Positions 1 to 61,265 of a DNA stretch of 64,000 nt are shown piece after piece (the stretch's first letter is position 1; each line of letters opens with the position of its first letter). Below the pieces are notes generated by a model that did not search any database, was not told where the DNA came from, and was given only the letters and a program-made list of their open reading frames with translations. The DNA is from Octopus bimaculoides (Eukaryota), in contig NC_068992.1 of assembly GCF_001194135.2 (NCBI RefSeq), positions 2,873,312-2,937,311 of the forward strand, given 5' to 3'. The translations under genes were made by a program, and so were the position numbers.

Positions 1-120
1 ACTCCTGAATCTATATTTGAAAAATAGTTTCTGGAACAACAACTTTTCACTAACCCAAGACATTAAGGTTAGTTTGTATTGAATTCTTAGACGTCTGTAA
101 GTTCCCTTTTAACAGAACAT

Positions 121-214
121 TATTATTTACATTATTTACATTTGACGGATATTTGTCCTCATCTTGTTGTTCGTTAACAGAACGTTTTGGCTGATGTATT
201 CTCCAGCCTTCATC
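121..214 (-). mobile_element. Inverted 3' part of the hammerhead-bearing SINE (ribozyme stem II, ACGT, tail)
   Basis: Reverse complement reads GATGA-A-GGCTG-gagaatacat-CAGCC-AAAACGTT-ctgttaacgaacaacaagatgaggacaaatatccgtcaaatgtaaataatg, matching 7416-7509. Confidence 0.85.
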
Positions 215-215
215 C

Positions 216-394
216 AACCCCAAGATTCCGAGTTTGATTCCAGGCAGTGACCTGATTAATGGTAATGATAATAACATCAGAAAAATATCTCAGGAATGTG
301 GACCCAGGTTCAAAATTCCCTCAGGACAAATATTCATCAAATGTAAATAATGTAAACAATGTACATAATTCCTCATCTCTCAAATATAGAACTG
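216..394 (+). mobile_element. Partial copy of the hammerhead-bearing SINE with the ribozyme segment deleted
   Basis: aaccccaagattccgagtttgattccaggcagtgacctga matches the tRNA-like head at 7280-7322. The sequence then jumps from aaattccc to aggacaaat and ends in the tail ...aaatatagaactg. Confidence 0.8.
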
Positions 395-453
395 CAGAAC
401 ATTATTATGTCTTTCTGAAGATTTTTTTAATAATTTATCTCTATAATTATTGG

Positions 454-5676: not shown

Positions 5677-6006
5677 GTTGTTGGCGCTCTGTCAGTTACA
5701 ACAACGAGGATTCCAGTTGATCCGATCAACGGAACAGCCTGCTCTTGAAATCAACGTGCAAGTGGCTGAGCACTCCACAGACACGTGTACCCTTAACGTA
5801 GTTCTCAAGGAGATTCAGTGTGACACAGAGTGTGACAAGGCTGGTCCCTTTGAATTACAGGTACAACTCATATTTGTCAGCTGAGTGGACTGGAGCAACA
5901 TGAAATAAAGTGTCTTGCTCAAGGACACAACATGTCACCAGGAATTGAACTCATGACCTTACAATCGTGAGTTGAATGCCCTAACCACTATGCCACACAC
6001 CTTCAC
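5677..6006 (-). mobile_element. Full-length tRNA-derived SINE (resembles octopus OR/OK-type SINEs)
   Basis: Minus-strand tRNA head at about 5930-6006. Tail shared with 23128-23503. Perfect 11-bp TSD attgcagatat (5666-5676, 6007-6017). Confidence 0.88.
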
Positions 6007-7234
6007 ATTGCAGATATAAGACTATTTCAACCTACATTAATTGTCACTTTTTTGTATGTTAAAAAGCAGTTCTGGACAGATGTGTTGCTTCATCAACAAT
6101 CTGCAACGACTAAAGCAAGTTGGAATTGTAAATATATGAAAATTGTGAAAACTGCATCTCAAATACTAGGCTTCCTGTGTAGGGAACAAACCATTTCACT
6201 TTGATAAGTGCCCATGTCTCTACAGAACTCCTGATTGCTGGCAAATCTTGGACAGAACTGCTGTGTTTAGCAGCAGTTCTGTCCGTGAATGTTCTAGATT
6301 GCGTAAAGAAATGCTACTCAGCAGATTTTCAAAGATTCATTCTCTAATCAGTACACAACAACCACTGACAAGATTATTGCCTTGGCAGTATAAAATGCCT
6401 CTGGTATTTAGTTATAATTCTTTGCATTCCTAGTTCTTCTAATTTCAGACCAAAATCTTTGTTTTTTCATCTTTCAAAGATGGCTAAAATAGATTTCAGT
6501 CAAATATTAGAATCAAATATAGAGAATCCTAGATGTGAATGAAATTATAAAACTAAGCTATAATGGATTCTGATCTTCTAAATTATCCAAACTCAAAACA
6601 CTTTTTAAACAAATACTCATTCTTCTTATATTGTCTTTCGCAACAAATTATTGATCAATCCTTCCTCCCCTAGCACTTTCAAGGCTCAATTTATAGACAT
6701 TTGAACTGAACATCAATTATTTCAGTCTCACTAGATTTCAAATAGGGCAGGAGGAGGAGTACTGATAATCTTTCAATTAAATAATAATAATTTTAAAAAA
6801 AATTAACTTTTGTTGTTTTACTCTCGCTTATTCTGTTCTGTGCCACCAAGATGGCAGGTCTCAACTCCAAGTAATAATCCTTTCTCCTATGACCCACAAG
6901 CCCTACTACAAGTGATAAGGCAAATCTTTCCACTTACCAGATAGGTTCAGTCCCACTGCGTGGAACCTTGGGCAAGTGTCTTCTACTATAGCTTTGGGCC
7001 GACCAAAGCCTCATGAGTGGAGTTGGTAGACAGAAACTGAAAGAAGCTCATCATGTGTGTGTGCATGTGTGCGTGCATGTGTGTATGTTTGTCCCTCAAC
7101 ATCACTTGACAACCGATGTTGGTATGTTTACATCCCTGTAACTTAACAGTTCAGCAAAAGAGAGCGATAGAATAAGTACTAGGCTTACAAAGAATAAGTC
7201 CTGGGGTCAATTTGCTCGATTAAAAAGGCAGTGC

Positions 7235-7317
7235 AGTTCTATATATGGGCATATGACATTGTGGTTAAGAGCGCAGGCTACTAACCCCAAGATTCCAAGT
7301 TCAATTCCAGGCAGTGA

Positions 7318-7361
<44 letters not shown>

Positions 7362-7509
7362 TCGAAAAATACCTTAGGAATGAGAACTCCGGTTTGAAAT
7401 TTCCCCATGACACCTGATGAAGGCTGGAGGGTATAACTGCCGAAACATTGTGTTAACAACAAACAAGATGAGGATAAATATCCATCTAATGTAAATAGTG
7501 TAAATAATG
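7235..7509 (+). mobile_element. tRNA-headed SINE carrying (AAT)n and a minimal hammerhead motif
   Basis: Perfect 14-bp TSD TAAAAAGGCAGTGC (7221-7234, 7510-7523). A-box-like tgtggttaagagcg, B-box-like gttcaattcc, and a repeated aatgtaaata tail. Confidence 0.9.
7408..7455 (+). ncRNA. Minimal type I hammerhead ribozyme-like motif (decayed)
   Basis: TGACAC-CTGATGA-A-GGCTG...CTGCC-GAAA-CATT-GTGTTA. Stem I is TGACAC/GTGTTA. The copy at 121-214 restores CAGCC and ACGT. Confidence 0.7.
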
Positions 7510-8660
7510 TAAAAAGGCAGTGCTCCAGCATGGCCGCAATCAAATGACTGAAACAAGTAGAAGAATAACAGAATGATTAATATTGTTCAAATAAGCATCA
7601 AAAAGACTTCATTCAGAAACTTTGGCAAATAGTTTTAGCTGATTCTTAGAACTGATTTTTCAAAACAGAAAATTAAAAGCTCCACTTCAATATTTATGTA
7701 TTGAATTGTTTGGGCTGTTTGGTTCATATTTTGACTGGACATTCATTCTCTTCTAACATAATTATAGAAAACAACAGTTAGATATGTAGATGCTTCTGGT
7801 CATCACACCATCATTGGTTCGATAATTGTTTGATATCTGTGGCAAATACTTGTATTGATGTGTTAACCTATTTCACACCCCATGTCAGTTAAATTATCAG
7901 TTAACTCTTGGGTGTCGCTGACTGAGTTGCTGAAGATAATGTAAAGAATAGAACTAACTATATTATCAGCTCTGACAACAGTTTTATAATCTCTATTCCA
8001 ACAGATAACAATTACTTAAGTTTGCACGAATAGCAATCTTCAACTGTTAACGTCCTTTCATATTGCTAAAGTTAGATCTGCTTCTATGAAAAATCTACGT
8101 TACTGGTACTTTGATATATCCGTATTAGGAAAAACATATATATGGTAGAATAGACCATTCTGTTAGAGGAAAGTTGTTATTCTTTTATTTACAGAACAAA
8201 CAGAACAGCAATTTTCATGACAAGAAAAATACATAACACTTCATTAACCACATTAATCTGGGAACTAAAAGTTAATATCTATCGTTCCATTTCCTGGTTT
8301 ATTATACAGAACTGCCTTTCCTTATGAGGGGGTCGCTTTGACTAATGTTCTGTGGAGGCACTTGAACTTCTAAGATACAAATCAATTCTAATTAATCTGT
8401 GTAATGAGCTGATAATAAGATGTAAACATTTAATCAACAGAAAATTCCTTAAATGCCATTTATCCAACCCATAAACTTTACTAACGTAGATGTGTGTCCA
8501 TCTCTTCTGTACCAAATGTATTTCTTTTACCTTTTGTATATAATGTTGAAATTCAACCTAAAAAGTCTTGGGATTGGCAACTTAACCTTGATTTACCTGT
8601 TTTTTCAACTACCTAAGATTTGTATACCAGCTAATGAATTTGACACTGTACATATATATA

Positions 8661-9139
8661 TCATCATCATCATCATCATCATCATCGTTTAACGTCCGCT
8701 TTCCATGCTAGCATGGGTTGGACGATTTGACTGAGGACTGGTGAAACCGGATGGCAACACCAGGCTCCAGTCTGATTTGGCAGAGTTTCTACAGCTGGAT
8801 GCCCTTCCTAACGCCAACCACTCAGAGAGTGTAGTGGGTGCTTTTACGTGTCACCCGCACGAAAACGGCCACGCTCGAAATGGTGTCTTTTATGTGCCAC
8901 CCGCACAAGCCAGTCCAGGGGCACTGGCAACGATCTCGCTCGAAAATCCTACAGGAGCCAGTCAGGCGGTACTGGCAACGGCCACGCTCAAAATGGTGCA
9001 TCTCATGTGCCACCCGCACAAGAACCAGTCCAGGGGCACTGGCAACGATCTTACTTGGCTTGCCGGGTCTTCTCACGCACAGCCCATTTCCAAAGGTCTC
9101 GGTCCGTAGTCATCGCCTCGGTGAGGCCCAATGTACGAA
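8661..9139 (-). mobile_element. Young RTE-clade LINE 3' end (ORF2 tip, 3'UTR, (GAT)n tail)
   Basis: Near-identical to 53575-53953 and 28209-28443. Its 9050-9139 part matches the sequence encoding ...TTDRDLWKWAVREKTRQAK* at 28751. Confidence 0.9.
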
Positions 9140-9173: not shown

Positions 9174-9308
9174 TTTATTCTTTTATTTGTTTCAGTCATT
9201 TGACTGTGGCCATACTGGAGCACTGCCTTTTTTCGAACAAATCGATCCCATGACTTTTTCTTTGTAAGCCTAGTTCTTATTCTATCGGTCTCTTTTGCCA
9301 AACCTCTA
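9174..9308 (-). mobile_element. SINE family D, 3' fragment
   Basis: Reverse complement of the family-D tail. Confidence 0.85.
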
Positions 9309-21039: not shown

Positions 21040-21169
21040 ACATTTATGTACACATATCAGATTAACACAATCAGACATGCACATGGAGAGTACAACATTG
21101 TATGTATACACACACTTTAACAAACATTTCTATAGCTTGTATAAATTAAATTTGTTCTTTCTTTGACAG

Positions 21170-21469
21170 CTGTTCACATCAGTGGGACTGACTATGTGGA
21201 GAACACCAAATCTATTGAAATTATATGTAACGCCACTAGTGGAGGTCGTCCACCAAAAGAGATCACATGGTTTAAAGATGGAGAAATTATTACTTCAGAG
21301 ACCAATAATGAACGGATACAGATCAAATCAGATGTTCACACGGTTGCACGGGCTTTGATAAGTAAACTTGTAATTAAACGGAGTCACTTAGATGATGCAG
21401 GGATATACGTGTGCAGAACATCTGACTTGAAAGCCACAGAGTTCAAAGTTCATGTGCTTAATACTTATG
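21170..21469 (+). CDS. Ig exon A of a Dpr/zig-8-like IgSF cell-surface protein (300 nt, phase 1/1)
   Basis: Acceptor tttgttctttctttgacAG, donor G|GTGAGT. Translation VHISGTDYVENTKSIEIICNAT...ITWFKDG...LISKLVIKRSHLDDAGIYVCRTSDLKATEFKVHVLNTY has the Ig B-strand Cys, C-strand Trp and DxGxYxC. The family call is from memory. Confidence 0.92.
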
Positions 21470-23127
21470 GTGAGTAATGAGATTCTTTTCCATTTTTTTT
21501 TTCTTGTTTTGTTTGTTTTTGTCAAAATGTTTGTCAAAAAAGTAAAACAATGAGAAAAAAAAACAGTTTTATTATACTACTCTGAAATGATGGATGATGA
21601 AGCAATAGTTTTAGCATAGCAATAGAAATTAAGACTTGCTTCCATATAAAGGTGCTACTCAATTGAATATGCTATAGATCTAAGTCTAGCTATTTTCCCC
21701 TGGTTTTTAAGTCTTGTAGATCTTAAATCCATTAATTAAAAATCATCAGAAGAATGAAAAGATAAGCTAACTTCAAGGAGTCAACTTCAAAAAAAATGAG
21801 GTTTTATTTATTAAAATTGCTATTTTATACTTTTTCTTGAAATCTTTTGTGCTTTGATTCTCTGTTTTCTGCTCTTCTGCTTATGTTTTGGTTTAAATAT
21901 GCCAAAACAGAATTCTTCTGTTTATTAATTTATATATTCATGCAGTTTGGATTTTTCTGTTAAAAATCTATTCCTTCTTCATATGACTTTTGCATATAAT
22001 GGCATAAGGAAAAAGGAGAATGATGTGAGAAAGCATTTAAAAATATTTATTCGTTTTGTTTCCTTCATCTTTAAGTGGGATTCCAATATTTTGAATAATT
22101 TGAAACGTGTTCTGAATTTCTGATAAGTCTCACAGCAGAAACAAATCTGCCATTATTGCTGCTACTGCCATTTTAACGATGGCAAATATTGAACAATAAA
22201 AGAAATTAAAACAGCAAGTCCTTACAAATAATATAACACACACTTTCAATCAATGTTCTTTTCTAAAAAAAATGTACTCTTTATTATTCAAAATATTACT
22301 GATAAATGTTTGCATACAATGGAGTTTATTTTAAAATACACTTTTTTTTTTTATTAAATTAAAAATATATTTGGAGAAGAGAAAAAACAAAGACATGTGA
22401 TTATTTTTTTAAAAGAAGAAATCTGGTCAAAGTATGCGAAATAAGAAATTGTTATTTAGTTTGAATATTAAGAAAATCTACAATTTGATTAAAAAGAGTT
22501 GGTCAAATATTTGAATTCACTTTTGAAGTAAAGACCATATCTCAGTTGTAAAGAGTTTCCAGATGTGATTTGTGTGATTGTTTTGTTTGAGACTAATACT
22601 TTTCCAAAGTTTCTGTTTTTGAAATTATTTTCTTTTTGCATTTCTCTGTGATGCCTCTGATGTTGATACATGATATTTTTAGCACTCTGATCTGATGGCA
22701 TGCGTTCTCTTGTTATGATATGCAAAAATGTTGCCTCAAATTTTACTTTTATGCATCTATTACCTCTTCATTTTCCCTCTTACCAACAAGGAATTGGCAT
22801 TTTGTTTGACAAAAGAAGCACAACCAATACATACCCTCTACAGAATAGGCAACTTGATGAAATGGTTAATTCCCACCATAAGCACCAAACTTCATGTTTA
22901 CAAGAGTTTAAAACTATAATGTTGATGATATTCTGAAGGGCTTTAGTAACATAATGGTCGTGCTTTTATATAACGGTGCTCCAATATTTATAAAGTTCGT
23001 AAAAGAGTCAAGCATATTTATTGAATAAAATTTTAAGACTTATTTTCATTGCAATGTTTAATCATTAGTCAAAATTAATTATTAGTCAAAAGAACATCAT
23101 TTAAATTTTTAGGTTTATTGGTTAATA

Positions 23128-23503: not shown

Positions 23504-23806
23504 ATCGGTTAATACATTTTGATTGATATGTAACAGAACCACATCAGCTGAAAATAGATGCAAACCAAAATGTTTAATTTAATGAAACAGTACAAACTTT
23601 GATGGCAGATTATTAGTTGCTGTTGATTATCTGTCAAAATTTATCAATTTAGTTGCTGTAATGATAAGCTCTGGAACTTATAGGCATAGATTTTCATACT
23701 CTCTGGTATTAATTGTTCCCTTGGGTACAGATTCTTTACTTGTTCTGTTTTCTGTTTGCTTGAAAGAAGCAAAATCATTTGAAAATACTAAATGCATCAG
23801 AAAACA

Positions 23807-24295
23807 CAGTTCCGTATTTAAGAGATGTGGAACTATGTACATTATTTACATTATTTACATTTGACAGGTATTTGTCCTCATCTTGTTTGTTGTTAACATA
23901 ACATGGCAGTCCTAGTTTAGGACTAATATTGCTGTAATTTAGCCCCAGGAGACATCGTCTCTAGCTGGCTATACGACACGGTCTGTCTCCTTATATTTTC
24001 AAACAAGGGAATCTAGCACCCCTACTCAACTCAAAAGGGTGCTAGATTCCCTTGTTTGAAAATATAAGGACACAGATCATGTCATATAGCCAGCTGGAGA
24101 CGATGTCTCCTGGGGCTAAATTACAGCAATATTCGTCCTAAACCAGGACTGCCATGTTATGTTGGCAAACAATCTTTACTACAAAGTACTGTTGCTGAAT
24201 ATCTTACGTTGTGAGATTTAAAAGCAGTAATTTTGTAACAAACAAGATGAGGACAAATATCCGTCAAATCTAAATAATATAAATAATGCATCATA
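23807..24295. repeat. Fold-back locus: 127-bp inverted arms plus outer inverted SINE tails
   Basis: Arms 23895-24021 and 24037-24163 (7 mismatches, 15-nt spacer). Tail copies at 23807-23900 (-) and about 24236-24295 (+). Confidence 0.92.
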
Positions 24296-53523: not shown

Positions 53524-53574
<51 letters not shown>

Positions 53575-53575
<1 letters not shown>

Positions 53576-53950
53576 CATCATCATCATCATCATCGTTTAA
53601 CGTCCGCTTTCCATGCTAGCATGGGTTGGACGATTTGACTGAGGACTGGTGAAACCGGATGGCAACACCAGGCTCCAGTCTGATTTGGCAGAGTTTCTAC
53701 AGCTGGATGCCCTTCCTAACGCCAACCACTCAGAGAGTGTAGTGGGTGCTTTTACGTGTCACCCGCACGAAAATGGCCACGCTCGAAATGGTGTCTTTTA
53801 TGTGCCACCCGCACAAGCCAGTCCAGGGGCACTGGCAACGATCTCGCTCGAAAATCCTACGGGAGCCAGTCAGGCGGTACTGGCAACGGCCACGCTCAAA
53901 ATGGTGCATCTCATGTGCCACCCGCACAAGAACCAGTCCAGGGGCACTGG

Positions 53951-55293: not shown

Positions 55294-55584
55294 ATGTGGT
55301 CGTTGTGAGGATTGCAGACCCCGTAAAACTTCAGTGTAACATTACCGCTAGCCACAAGAATCCGCAAGCTACTGCTATCCTTTGGTTCAAGCAAGATAAG
55401 CTCTTCACACCAAACTCTAAGGCGAAAATATTTATCAATCATTACTCTTTGCAACCACAAGGAATGCTTCTCAGTGTCTTTTCTATCATACACGCTAAAT
55501 ATGAAGATTCTGGGGTTTACAGTTGTAAAACTAGCAATTTTAATGAGATCCGCCGTTTCAAAGTGGAGGTTATAGGATCTAATG
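55294..55584 (+). CDS. Ig exon B of the same IgSF gene (291 nt, phase 1/1)
   Basis: Acceptor tcttcccctttAG, donor G|GTGAGT. Translation VVVVRIADPVKLQCNIT...ILWFKQD...LLSVFSIIHAKYEDSGVYSCKTSNFNEIRRFKVEVIGSN is a complete Ig core and splices in frame with exon A. Confidence 0.9.
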
Positions 55585-56226
55585 GTGAGTACGTGATGGT
55601 TTGGTTGTTGATTTCTTTGGTTTTTGAACCCAATCTTTCCCTCTTCCTCCTGTTATTGCTGCCGCTGCTACTGTTCTTGCTACTGCTCGTACTGTACTTC
55701 ACCAATTTCTGTACTTCTTCGGAACTGTGCATTTCCAGCTTTAGAGATTTCTATCTCTACCTTTCTGGATATTTTTCTGTTAAAATGGGAAAAACTTTTT
55801 TAATAAATATATATATATATTTATATATACATAAAAAAAAATTAAAAGGAAAAAAAAATACTTAACATGCATTGTATTTGCTTGACTACAAGAAAAAACT
55901 AACTGGCTGCTGTAGCAACTAACCGTTTTCAAGAATGGAATGCTTGGTTTTACAGGAAGTTTCTTAACAGTCTTATCTGGTTTCACTTGAGGAACATCAC
56001 TCCTTTCTTTCCTTCCAGCTCAAATATCTGCTTTTAAACTACCTTACGAAATCAAAGTGGTCAAAGACATTCATACATTCTATACGGAAAGTACACACAC
56101 ACACACACACATTATTGCATGTGTGTGTATGTGAATATGTAAATGTATGCATACCTATTTATCTATCTTTCTATCTATCTGTCTCTTTGTCACTGTCTGT
56201 CTCACATATACACACTCCCTCCCTCA

Positions 56227-60462: not shown

Positions 60463-60942
60463 TTTTGATTTGTTTCTTCTAGCTAACAGGCTATTCTATT
60501 TCCACACATTCTGTGACTGACTAACACCAAAATCCCTTCTGCTCACTTGTTTTAATTGAAATCAGTTGTCAGACTGATTTATAAATTCTTGTGTGGGAAG
60601 AATTCTCATTATCAATTTATTTATTTATTTGCATATTTATTTTAATTTATGTTTGATAAAAAGAATGAAAATTTCTATTCAATATTGTTGTACATTTTTC
60701 ACAAAACAGTTGTGATCTTTTCTCTCCAGATAGAGATGAATGGTTATTTAATCAGGTAAGAATATAAGTCAAACGAATAATTTGTGCTGTTAGTGTCTTC
60801 CAAGGCATTAGATATTTAGATTTACTTTAATTTGTGCACACACACACACACACGTCTTTGTATGCGTGAGAGCTCTTGTGTTTTACATATATATAATGTT
60901 GACAAACTATGTGTGACAACAAAAGAGATAAACGTCAATATG

Positions 60943-61215
60943 TATTGGGCAATATGTATTGCATATGACTATATTGTATTGTCTTATGTATACAATAAGA
61001 GTGTCACATACTGAATTTGAGTATGACAGTAAAACCTTGGGTGTGAGGTCATCACAGATGTATACAGCAACTCTACCATGGCTCCTTTCCCTTCTGTCTG
61101 TTCGCAGTATGGTATATTTTGGTACGCATACTTCTGCATCCTTTATATTATATATGAGGTGAGTTTCCACAAGTGCTATGAATAGGGCTTGATTGCATGC
61201 AGCAAGGTCTGTCAG
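60943..61215 (-). mobile_element. LINE APE-endonuclease fragment (CR1/L2-like)
   Basis: FIALVETHL...IKDAEVCVPKYTILRTDRRERSHGRVAVYI...SNSVCDTL...IVICNTYCP matches the ETWL / Y..R.DR..GGGVA.Y / IYRPP pattern. Confidence 0.8.
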
Positions 61216-61265
61216 GAAAAAAATTTTGCTTTTGTTATGATATTTATATATACATATTTATATAA

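What the first reader, a model, noticed from the sequence alone, without database searches (positions are those of the whole stretch)
7235..7509. tRNA-headed SINE carrying a minimal hammerhead ribozyme, inserted with a perfect 14-bp TSD
Seen: a discrete 275-bp element nested in another SINE, with TSD TAAAAAGGCAGTGC. Its layout is Pol III A/B-box head, (AAT)n, hammerhead-like core, then a repeated tail. Combining this copy with 121-214 gives TGACAC-CTGATGA-A-GGCTG(10 nt)CAGCC-GAA-ACGT-T|GTGTTA. The differences between copies in the core are CpG-type decays. Established: Penelope-associated minimal hammerheads reduce stem III to a palindrome and cleave as dimers. Inference: this is a chimaeric Pol III/ribozyme retroposon. 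Copies include sequence 3' of the predicted cut, so uncut RNA is what retroposes, and dimer-dependent cleavage could act as a dose-dependent brake or a processing step. I do not recall such an octopus SINE being described, but could not check.
Basis: partly seen in the sequence, partly recalled or inferred. Interest (0 to 1): 0.85.

Follow-up and report, generated by a model that had tools for sequence, protein, structure and literature searches.

The report
Octopus SINE carrying a Penelope-type hammerhead
A 275-bp mobile element with a tRNA-gene-like promoter head carries near its 3' end a decayed copy of the minimal hammerhead ribozyme typical of Penelope-like retrotransposons. It was probably copied by such an element's enzymes, which makes it a mollusc counterpart of the hammerhead-bearing SINE-like repeats known from blood flukes.

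Summary
Positions 7235-7509 are a discrete 275-bp insertion flanked by a perfect 14-bp duplication, and paralogous copies of the host SINE read straight through the site.

The layout is:
- a Pol III-type head (A box 9/11, B box 9/11, tRNA-gene spacing, but no foldable cloverleaf);
- an (AAT)~13 run and a short body;
- a hammerhead-like motif at 7408-7455;
- a 55-nt tail.

A descriptor that accepts this copy hits shuffled windows about 0.005 times. This copy carries two disabling substitutions, the only other copy is 5'-truncated, and the intact ribozyme is a two-copy composite.

Two of the three insertions with this tail are inverted 5'-truncated pairs with a 33-nt extension at one end. That is a Penelope-like signature, not a LINE one.

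Best reading: a Penelope-dependent SINE whose hammerhead came with the borrowed 3' end and is not needed for copying. Schistosome Smα elements are a precedent. The dose-dependent brake idea is unsupported. No genome-wide consensus could be obtained.

The parts
7221..7234 (+). Left copy of the target-site duplication TAAAAAGGCAGTGC (host SINE sequence)
   Evidence: paralogous empty sites
7235..7246 (+). 12-nt leader AGTTCTATATAT upstream of the tRNA-like +1. Together with the next 3 nt it matches (13/15) the reverse complement of the distal end of the 33-nt extension seen at 362-394 and 23806-23839
   Evidence: reading
7247..7320 (+). tRNA-gene-like Pol III head: A box 7254-7264, B box 7298-7308, 44 nt start to start. 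No cloverleaf
   Evidence: alignment with other tRNA-type SINE heads in the window; negative ARAGORN; no Rfam tRNA hit
7322..7359 (+). Internal (AAT)12.7 microsatellite. Copy C has the degenerate form TGATTAATGGTAATGATAATAAC
7360..7407 (+). Family-specific body, shared with copy C (280-322)
7408..7455 (+). Penelope-type minimal type-I hammerhead motif, decayed. Helix I 7408-7413/7450-7455; CUGAUGA 7414-7420; extra A 7421; helix II 7422-7426/7437-7441 (U.U at 7425/7438); GAA 7442-7444; A15.1 7445; C7446-A7447 (CG in copy B); U16.1 7448; U17 7449; predicted cut 7449|7450
   Evidence: defining features from PMC4209133
7450..7509 (+). 3' tail module GTGTTAACAACAAACAAGATGAGGAYAAATAYCCRTCWAATGTAAATARTGTAAATAATG, shared by all five tail-bearing copies in the window. 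It overlaps the 3' strand of helix I
7510..7523 (+). Right copy of the target-site duplication
122..214 (-). Copy B: 5'-truncated inside the hammerhead (starts at GATGA). Helix II intact (GGCTG/CAGCC), AAAACGTT, then the tail. 84% identical to copy A
215..361 (+). Copy C: 5'-truncated at the anticodon-arm region, with head, body and tail but lacking 63 nt including the hammerhead (deletion flanked by ATGA). Joined head-to-head to copy B
362..394 (+). 33-nt extension TACATAATTCCTCATCTCTCAAATATAGAACTG after copy C's tail. The B+C unit is flanked by CAGAACATTATTAT at 113-126 and 395-408
23792..24293 (.). Sister insertion with the same tail and no hammerhead. Extension at 23806-23839; inverted arms 23840-24021 and 24037-24288 (93% complementary, 15-nt spacer, 68-nt extra segment in the right arm); flanked by ATGCATCAgAAAA / ATGCATCAtAAAA

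Best explanation
What it is. A non-autonomous retroposon of an Octopus-type genome. It consists of a tRNA-gene-derived internal Pol III promoter, an AAT microsatellite, a short body, and a 3' module. The 3' module is a Penelope-type minimal hammerhead directly abutting and overlapping a ~60-nt terminal tail.

How it most likely works.
1. (Inferred) Pol III starts near 7247 and reads through the element. There is no T4 run inside it; the first is at 7633.
2. (Inferred from the insertion architecture) The tail is recognised by the reverse transcriptase / GIY-YIG nickase of a Penelope-like element (PLE).
3. (Shown) Target-primed reverse transcription then inserted the copy into a CORE-type SINE with a 14-bp duplication.

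Role of the hammerhead.
- (Inferred) It came along as part of the borrowed PLE 3' end (pseudo-LTR).
- (Shown) In this copy it is a fossil with two disabling substitutions.
- (Inferred) In the source element it was probably intact. Like other PLE minimal hammerheads, it could cut only when two RNAs pair through the ACGU palindrome, and weakly.
- (Shown) Cleavage is not part of the copying pathway seen here. All copies contain both sides of the cut, the tail needed for priming lies 3' of it, and the same tail mobilises hammerhead-free sequences.
For: Insertion, duplication and empty sites.

Unit architecture recurs in independent insertions A, B and C.

Hammerhead.
- A descriptor hit occurs once in the window, against ~0.005 in shuffles.
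- Two of the four A/B differences at constrained sites are polarised by CpG decay towards the functional state. The same CpG logic independently restores the B box (CCGAGTTCGATTCC) from copies A and C.
- A scan of JGI metagenome contigs with only the core/helix II pattern returned one locus, seen in two datasets. It carries a perfect minimal hammerhead whose helix I (UCCC/GGGA) pairs with a different sequence, and helix I was not part of the pattern.

PLE machinery.
- Two of the three insertion events carrying this tail are head-to-head 5'-truncated pairs with tails outward and a homologous 33-nt extension at one end only.
- Craig et al. 2021 describe exactly this for PLEs and state that it is not observed in TPRT of non-LTR elements.
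- Duplication length varies between ~8-14 bp and 14 bp, as expected for PLEs.
- Octopus genomes hold recently active Penelope families and ~900 unclassified SINE families.
Against: - Only two hammerhead-bearing copies were available, one of them truncated.
- No autonomous PLE sharing this tail was found, and none could be searched for.
- The sister family and copy C lack the hammerhead. The motif is therefore not tied to the tail, and a separate origin cannot be excluded.
- A tail ending in short tandem repeats is also typical of CR1/L2-type LINE partners.
- Rfam hammerhead models do not hit the motif. They also miss the perfect control, so this counts for little.
- The head does not fold as a tRNA.
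- The PLE signature rests on three insertion events in one 64-kb window.
Confidence: 0.55

Rival explanations
1. Working ribozyme with a regulatory role. Source copies carry an active dimer-dependent hammerhead, and trans-dimerisation at high SINE (or SINE plus PLE) RNA concentration cuts off the priming tail. This would limit retroposition, or process read-through transcripts.
For: The motif has the full minimal-hammerhead architecture. The cut would separate head and body from the tail. PLE minimal hammerheads cleave as dimers in vitro, though weakly.
Against: There is no evidence of cleavage. In vitro activity of such motifs is very low even as dimers. A dispersed monomer has no partner in cis. 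Hammerhead-free relatives with the same tail are mobilised as well. This copy is mutated at two constrained positions.
Confidence: 0.12
2. The hammerhead fold is kept as a structural recognition element for the partner's reverse transcriptase, like the 3' stem-loops of stringent LINE/SINE pairs, and catalysis is irrelevant.
For: The motif sits immediately upstream of the shared tail and overlaps it, because the 3' strand of helix I is part of the tail module. The role of the hammerhead in PLEs is unknown.
Against: The sister family (23792-24293) and copy C have the tail without the motif, so recognition does not require it.
Confidence: 0.13
3. An ordinary LINE-dependent tRNA-SINE (CR1/L2-type tail with short tandem repeats) in which a hammerhead-like string arose by chance or is an unrelated relic. 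The inverted pairs are coincidental rearrangements.
For: The tail ends in 9-nt repeats, as many LINE/SINE tails do. Variable duplications and 5' truncation also fit LINEs. About 0.005 chance hits per window still means of the order of 200 per 2.7-Gb genome (2.7 Gb is from memory, not measured here), and this window was picked after reading. LINE fragments are present in the window.
Against: The motif also shows the bulged nucleotide, G10.1-C11.1 and the CG palindrome. It is inherited within a repeat family (A and B). Both arms of each inverted pair carry complete 3' tails, which single-RNA twin priming cannot give. The homologous 33-nt extension occurs at two independent loci. Such structures are reported as PLE-specific.
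Confidence: 0.15
4. Not a unit: two unrelated fragments (a tRNA-SINE piece and a truncated PLE end) that happen to lie side by side.
For: None specific. Nested insertions are common in this window.
Against: One perfect duplication brackets the whole 275 bp. Head, body and tail occur in the same order in copy C, and hammerhead plus tail occur in copy B.
Confidence: 0.03

Closest known systems
Smα / Sjα SINE-like retroposons of Schistosoma (Ferbeyre et al. 1998; Laha et al. 2000; now counted among metazoan retrozymes)
   Same: Short non-autonomous retroposon with a tRNA-derived Pol III promoter region (tRNA-Glu in Smα) and a type-I hammerhead, in an invertebrate that also harbours PLEs.
   Different: Smα has a canonical, demonstrably active hammerhead with loop-loop contacts. 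It is often tandemly repeated and yields unit-length or circular RNAs. Here the motif is the minimal PLE type (no helix III), there is one per dispersed monomer, it lies near the 3' end ahead of a 55-nt tail, and activity is untested. No sequence comparison was possible.
Minimal hammerheads of Penelope-like element pseudo-LTRs (Cervera & de la Pena 2014; Lunse, Weinberg & Breaker 2017)
   Same: CUGAUGA, then an extra nucleotide, then helix II closed by G10.1-C11.1, then GAAA, then a 2-nt palindrome, then U-H. Short helix I; dimer-dependent helix III. Thousands occur as dispersed single motifs in invertebrate genomes, and some as opposite-strand pairs 100-700 bp apart.
   Different: Those dispersed motifs were interpreted as truncated PLEs. 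Here the motif is part of a defined unit with its own Pol III-type head. Helix II is 5-6 bp, against the 7-8 bp reported for Schistosoma families.
Metazoan non-LTR retrozymes (Cervera & de la Pena 2020; Li, Clavereau & Pollet 2026 preprint)
   Same: Non-coding, hammerhead-bearing, thought to be mobilised by PLEs and related to their pseudo-LTRs. Monomeric 'solo' copies exist.
   Different: Retrozymes are defined by tandem units delimited by hammerheads and by circular RNA intermediates, and reportedly lack promoters. This element is a TSD-flanked monomer whose ends do not coincide with the cleavage site, and it has an internal Pol III-type promoter.
Classical tRNA-derived SINEs with a LINE-derived tail (e.g. 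octopus OK/OR1/OR2 of Ohshima & Okada 1994; CORE-SINEs)
   Same: Head-body-tail architecture, A/B boxes, 5' truncation, variable duplications, nesting. The host element here is such a CORE-type SINE.
   Different: The tail carries PLE-type insertion signatures (inverted pairs, 33-nt extension) and a hammerhead. No CORE domain is present.

Membership tests
Hammerhead ribozyme, Penelope-type minimal type I | Conserved core boxes CUGANGA and GAAA | tested here: met
   Copy A has CTGATGA at 7414-7420 and GAAA at 7442-7445. Copy B has GATGA (truncated) and AAAA, where G12 to A is a CpG-type change.
Hammerhead ribozyme, Penelope-type minimal type I | Helix I and helix II complementarity with a G10.1-C11.1 closing pair | tested here: met
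   Helix I UGACAC/GUGUUA is 6 bp (one G.U) in copy A. Helix II GGCUG/CUGCC is 4 of 5 bp in A and a perfect GGCUG/CAGCC in B. G10.1-C11.1 is present in both.
Hammerhead ribozyme, Penelope-type minimal type I | [quoted passage not shown] | tested here: met
   A at 7421, present in A and B. The feature is described in PMC4209133.
Hammerhead ribozyme, Penelope-type minimal type I | Palindromic 15.2-16.2 replacing helix III, then U16.1 and H17 | tested here: inconclusive
   Copy B reads A-CG-U-U and meets it. Copy A reads A-CA-U-U, a CpG-type decay, and does not.
Hammerhead ribozyme, Penelope-type minimal type I | Covariation / compensatory changes across a family of copies | not testable with these tools
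   There are only two copies in 64 kb, and no octopus DNA was retrievable. The cross-species control L001 shows a different but pairing helix I.
Hammerhead ribozyme, Penelope-type minimal type I | Match to the curated Rfam hammerhead covariance models | tested here: not met
   No hit at gathering score or at E<=10. The same search also misses the perfect minimal hammerhead in L001, so the models do not cover this subtype.
Hammerhead ribozyme, Penelope-type minimal type I | Self-cleavage (as a dimer) | not testable with these tools
   Needs in vitro transcription. Structure prediction only shows helices I and II as the dominant predicted pairings.
tRNA-derived SINE (SINE2) | Internal Pol III promoter: A and B boxes at tRNA-gene spacing | tested here: met
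   A box 9/11 at 7254-7264 and B box 9/11 at 7298-7308 (10/11 CpG-restored), 44 nt apart. The head aligns with other tRNA-type SINE heads in the window.
tRNA-derived SINE (SINE2) | Recognisable tRNA cloverleaf / identifiable parent tRNA | tested here: not met
   ARAGORN finds none at default or at 60-90% thresholds, and there is no Rfam tRNA hit. Similarity to the tRNA-Arg T-arm is from memory only.
tRNA-derived SINE (SINE2) | Dispersed repeat family, 5'-truncated copies, target-site duplications, no coding capacity | tested here: met
   Three family copies (A, B, C) in 64 kb, duplications of 14 and ~8-14 bp, and no meaningful ORF.
Non-autonomous element mobilised by a Penelope-like element | Inverted or tandem 5'-truncated insertion units | tested here: met
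   The B/C pair (122-361) and the pair at 23840-24288, with tails outward. Described for PLEs in PMC8557442.
Non-autonomous element mobilised by a Penelope-like element | [quoted passage not shown] | tested here: met
   Homologous 33-nt extension at 362-394 and 23806-23839, each on one end only.
Non-autonomous element mobilised by a Penelope-like element | 3' end shared with an autonomous RT/GIY-YIG element of the same genome | not testable with these tools
   No PLE carrying this tail is in the window: there are only five tail copies. The octopus genome could not be searched.
Metazoan non-LTR retrozyme | Tandem units delimited by hammerheads, giving circular RNA | tested here: not met
   There is a single hammerhead per TSD-flanked monomer, and the element's ends (7235, 7509) do not coincide with the cut site 7449|7450.

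The most novel reading that the evidence does not exclude
This is the founding example of a true SINE class that parasitises Penelope-like elements rather than LINEs. It would be a Pol III-transcribed tRNA-derived head fused to a PLE 3' end, whose minimal hammerhead is catalytically competent in source copies. Because it can fold only by pairing with a second RNA, it would couple SINE and PLE RNA levels through trans-cleavage that removes the priming tail. This would also explain a share of the thousands of 'orphan' minimal hammerheads in invertebrate genomes.
Probability: 0.15. Interest if true: 0.7.

Novelty: new member of a known kind. Interest (0 to 1): 0.42.

Why it matters
Thousands of minimal hammerheads lie scattered in invertebrate genomes and have been written off as truncated Penelope-like elements. 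A defined, Pol III-headed carrier would show that some of them are cargo of a dedicated SINE.

It would also give PLEs the kind of SINE partner that LINEs are known to have. That would provide a small, tractable substrate for studying two open questions: what PLE reverse transcriptase recognises, and what the hammerhead is for.

Octopus genomes are about 12% SINE, mostly unclassified, so the family may matter for annotation too. This single window shows a decayed copy and cannot settle activity.

Tried and rejected
RNA and tRNA model searches.
- Rfam at gathering score on the whole window, and at E<=10 on 7200-7530 and 1-420, gave no hammerhead or tRNA. A control on a perfect minimal hammerhead (L001) is also missed, so these negatives are uninformative.
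- ARAGORN at default and relaxed thresholds found no tRNA.

Attempts to obtain more family copies.
- A chimeric six-frame peptide of the SINE against the protein database gave no hit.
- The Ig-like exon at 55296-55865 gave no candidate.
- LINE fragments plus the exon at 21145-21474 hit Octopus sinensis hemicentin-1 (92%) and an Argonauta homologue. Their genes span 340 kb and 135 kb, so no DNA was returned.
- An ENA metagenome contig with a cephalopod-like LINE (L003) holds no copy.
- The tail pattern found nothing in JGI metagenome, viral or prokaryotic contigs.
- The core pattern found nothing in viral contigs, and only the unrelated locus L001/L002 in metagenomes.

Alternatives considered and rejected.
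- L1-type twin priming for the inverted pairs: rejected because both arms carry complete 3' tails.
- An alternative helix III hairpin GUUGU/ACAAC downstream of GAAAC: rejected because it leaves no U16.1/H17.
- A hidden hammerhead in the arms of the sister element at 23840-24288: none, with no CUGANGA or GAAA in register.
- A relaxed descriptor gives one further hit at 47834. It has a non-palindromic loop, and 0.19 hits are expected by chance, so it is treated as chance.

Literature. Searches found no description of a hammerhead-bearing octopus SINE or of a tRNA-SINE assigned to a PLE partner. The Ferbeyre 1998 and Lunse 2017 papers were not held.
Full report
**1. The observation**

Positions 7235-7509 are a discrete 275-bp block bracketed by two perfect copies of TAAAAAGGCAGTGC, at 7221-7234 and 7510-7523. 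The block sits inside another SINE. I joined the flanks with a single copy of the 14-mer and searched the window with the result. Several paralogous copies of that host SINE (9175-9298, 25623-25752, 41436-41560, 31584-31687) read straight through the junction as ...TTCGAcTAAAGGCAGTGCTCCAGCATGG.... These act as paralogous empty sites. The 14 bp are host sequence duplicated at insertion, so this is a genuine target-site duplication.

The host carries the ACCTTGGGCAAGTG... core typical of CORE-SINEs, the superfamily to which the classical octopus OR family belongs.

The window is a 33% GC draft assembly with N gaps. One exon (21145-21474) is 92% identical at the protein level to hemicentin-1 of Octopus sinensis. 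The window therefore comes from an Octopus species close to O. sinensis but not identical with it.

**2. Anatomy**

- **Leader (7235-7246).** Twelve nucleotides, AGTTCTATATAT.
- **Head (7247-7320).** The A box TGACATTGTGG (7254-7264) matches 9/11 to TRGCNNAGTGG. The B box AGTTCAATTCC (7298-7308) matches 9/11 to GGTTCGANNCC. They start 44 nt apart, which is tRNA-gene geometry. Copy C reads CCGAGTTTGATTCC where copy A reads CCAAGTTCAATTCC. Restoring the CpGs gives CCGAGTTCGATTCC, a 10/11 B box. The head aligns in register with other tRNA-type SINE heads in the window. However, ARAGORN finds no cloverleaf even at 60% of its thresholds, and Rfam gives no tRNA hit. 'tRNA-headed' is thus justified for promoter architecture, not for a foldable tRNA.
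- **Microsatellite (7322-7359).** (AAT)12.7.
- **Body (7360-7407).** A 48-nt family-specific segment.
- **Hammerhead-like motif (7408-7455).**
- **Tail (to 7509).** It ends in TGTAAATAR repeats.

There is no T4 run inside the element. The first downstream one is at 7633, so a Pol III transcript would read through.

**3. The hammerhead**

In copy A the motif reads:
UGACAC / CUGAUGA / A / GGCUG-(10 nt)-CUGCC / GAA / A-CA-U / U | GUGUUA.

This is a type-I layout, with helix I open. Helix I has 6 bp and helix II is closed by G10.1-C11.1. Copy A has two defects: a U.U mismatch at the fourth pair of helix II, and CA where a 2-nt palindrome is expected.

Copy B (122-214, minus strand, 84% identical) begins inside the core at GAUGA. 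It has a perfect helix II (GGCUG/CAGCC) and A-CG-U-U, but AAA instead of GAA and C instead of G at position 1.1.

Of the four A/B differences at constrained positions, two are CpG-type and are polarised towards the functional state (CCGAAA to CCAAAA; ACGU to ACAU). The other two are transversions of unknown polarity. All positions where A and B agree already fit the hammerhead.

Three lines of evidence argue that this is not a chance string.

- **Frequency.** A descriptor loose enough to accept copy A hits the window once. The descriptor requires CUGANGA, a 0-1 nt bulge, a 5-bp helix II with at most one mismatch, GAAANNUH, and a 5-bp helix I. It hits dinucleotide-shuffled windows 0.003-0.007 times. 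Over a whole genome, assumed from memory to be about 2.7 Gb, that rate still allows about 200 chance hits, and the window was chosen after reading. The next two points therefore matter more.
- **Unselected features.** Cervera & de la Pena (2014) define the minimal hammerheads of Penelope-like elements. [quoted passage not shown] The octopus composite has all three.
- **Cross-check in other data.** I scanned JGI metagenome contigs with only the core/helix II pattern GATGAAGGCTGG-N6-16-GCCRAAACRTT. It returned one locus, present in two datasets (L001 and L002): UUCCC-CUGAUGA-A-GGCU-(8 nt)-AGCC-GAAACGUU|GGGAC. The flanks form a 4-bp helix I of entirely different sequence, and helix I was not part of the pattern. 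The octopus core is thus of the same make as a bona fide minimal hammerhead in another eukaryote.

Rfam's hammerhead models hit neither copy A nor this perfect control. The Rfam negative therefore says nothing about this subtype. Secondary-structure prediction recovers helices I and II as the main pairings for copy A, for the composite and for the control. As in all such motifs, helix III can form only between two molecules (ACGU with ACGU, 4 bp).

**4. The family in the window, and what mobilised it**

Profile searches find five copies of the ~60-nt tail and no more. They belong to three insertion events.

- **Copy A.** The full-length monomer.
- **Copies B and C.** These are joined head-to-head at their truncated 5' ends (214/215) with the tails pointing outward.
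  - C has head, body and tail but lacks 63 nt including the hammerhead. The gap is flanked by ATGA on both sides.
  - After C's tail comes a 33-nt extension (362-394).
  - The whole unit is flanked by CAGAACATTATTAT (113-126 and 395-408).
- **The unit at 23792-24293.**
  - It has the same tail and a homologous 33-nt extension (23806-23839).
  - Its two arms are 93% complementary, separated by 15 nt.
  - It is flanked by ATGCATCAgAAAA / ATGCATCAtAAAA.
  - Its arms have a different body and no hammerhead boxes.

Head-to-head pairs in which both arms carry complete 3' ends cannot come from twin priming on one RNA. Craig et al. (2021) describe precisely these structures for Penelope-like elements: inverted 5'-truncated copies, and a 30-40-bp extension at one end only. 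[quoted passage not shown] They also report variable duplication length, and hammerheads near the 3' ends within pseudo-LTRs. Octopus vulgaris has recently active Penelope families and about 900 unclassified SINE families.

I therefore infer that the tail is a PLE 3' end and that PLE enzymes did the copying. This rests on three events in one window, and no autonomous partner was seen.

One curious detail remains. The first 15 nt of copy A (AGTTCTATATATGGG) match 13/15 the reverse complement of the far end of the extension. They lie upstream of the expected Pol III start. They may therefore be added at integration rather than transcribed.

**5. Mechanism**

Shown:
- a unit with a Pol III-type head and a PLE-type hammerhead plus tail was inserted with a 14-bp duplication;
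- all copies include both sides of the predicted cut;
- the same tail moves hammerhead-free sequences.

Inferred:
- Pol III transcription;
- recognition of the tail by a PLE reverse transcriptase / GIY-YIG nickase;
- the hammerhead arriving as a passenger with the borrowed 3' end;
- an intact motif in the source copy, able to cut only as an intermolecular dimer, and weakly, as reported for other PLE minimal hammerheads.

Cutting would sever the priming tail. Cleavage is thus at best antagonistic to retroposition, and the copies we see came from uncut RNA. A purely structural role is weakened by the hammerhead-free relatives.

**6. Comparison with what is known**

- **Smα/Sjα of Schistosoma.** This is the closest precedent: SINE-like, Pol III-promoted, containing a tRNA-Glu-derived segment and an active type-I hammerhead. 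It is now grouped with metazoan retrozymes.
- **Non-LTR retrozymes.** They are regarded as non-autonomous PLE derivatives related to pseudo-LTRs, and monomeric copies exist.
- **Dispersed minimal hammerheads.** They are abundant in invertebrates and were ascribed to truncated PLEs, including opposite-strand pairs 100-700 bp apart.

The octopus element differs in several ways. It carries the minimal, helix-III-less motif rather than a canonical one. It is a TSD-flanked monomer whose ends do not coincide with the cleavage site. It has its own promoter head. It fails the defining retrozyme feature of tandem, hammerhead-delimited units.

No paper in the held library describes a hammerhead in an octopus SINE, or a tRNA-SINE assigned to a PLE partner. 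That is absence from one library, not proof. Dfam, Repbase and SINEBase could not be queried.

**7. Verdict**

- The element is best filed as a new member of the known kind 'hammerhead-bearing, PLE-associated non-autonomous retroposon with a Pol III head', in a new phylum and with the minimal motif.
- The specific copy is a fossil.
- The main weakness is that only two hammerhead-bearing copies could be examined. Every route to more octopus DNA failed.
- Interest is moderate. It would rise if a genome-wide consensus shows an intact, covarying hammerhead and an RT/GIY-YIG partner with the same 3' end.

Noticed in passing
window 113-408: Copies B (minus) and C (plus) of the same family are fused head-to-head at 214/215 with tails outward. 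A 33-nt extension follows C's tail, and CAGAACATTATTAT flanks the whole unit. This is a Penelope-type compound insertion.
   Followed up: yes
window 23792-24293: A foldback insertion. Two arms are 93% complementary with a 15-nt spacer, and carry the same 60-nt tail and 33-nt extension but a different body and no hammerhead. The right arm has an extra 68 nt (24169-24236).
   Followed up: partly
window 7235-7249 versus 362-394 and 23806-23839: The first 15 nt of the full-length copy match 13/15 the reverse complement of the distal end of the 33-nt extension, and lie upstream of the expected Pol III start. They may be added at integration rather than transcribed. Unexplained.
   Followed up: partly
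window 305-335 versus 7400-7475: Copy C lacks exactly 63 nt spanning the hammerhead, and the gap is flanked by ATGA on both sides. This could be a microhomology deletion, a template jump, or a hammerhead-free subfamily. It cannot be decided from one copy.
   Followed up: partly
window 21145-21474 and 55296-55590, plus strand: Two Ig-domain exons. The first is 92% identical to hemicentin-1 of Octopus sinensis, whose gene spans about 340 kb. The SINE at 7235 therefore probably lies in an intron, in sense orientation.
   Followed up: partly
window 28754-29014 (minus) and 60910-61257 (minus): LINE fragments. One is a reverse-transcriptase C-terminal region (RLRWYGHVVRM...GRGRPRKTW), about 70% identical to RT+PHD proteins on ENA metagenome contigs. 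The other is an endonuclease N-terminal region.
   Followed up: partly
window 8666-8861, 28210-28405, 28484-28674, 42004-42199, 53568-53769 and others; L003 1844-2043: An abundant ~200-bp repeat is about 80% identical to the stretch about 350 nt downstream of the RT ORF stop (1494) on contig L003, a 'metagenome' contig that looks like cephalopod host DNA. This suggests a LINE/SINE pair sharing a 3' region.
   Followed up: no
L001 6749-6780 and L002 6113-6144 (minus strand): A perfect minimal hammerhead (UCCC-CUGAUGA-A-GGCU...AGCC-GAAACGUU|GGGA) lies in a non-coding stretch of two near-identical JGI/ENA metagenome contigs of unknown eukaryotic origin. All Rfam models miss it at E<=10.
   Followed up: partly
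window 5925-6015 (minus): Another tRNA-type SINE head, with better boxes (TGGCATAGTGGTTAGGGC ... GAGTTCAATTCCTGG), belonging to a different family.
   Followed up: no
window 47830-47872 (plus): A second hit of a relaxed hammerhead descriptor (GUUG-CUGAGGA-G-GUCA...UGAU-GAAA-GAAC-UU-UGAC), just after a long T run. The loop is non-palindromic, and 0.19 such hits are expected by chance. Probably fortuitous.
   Followed up: partly
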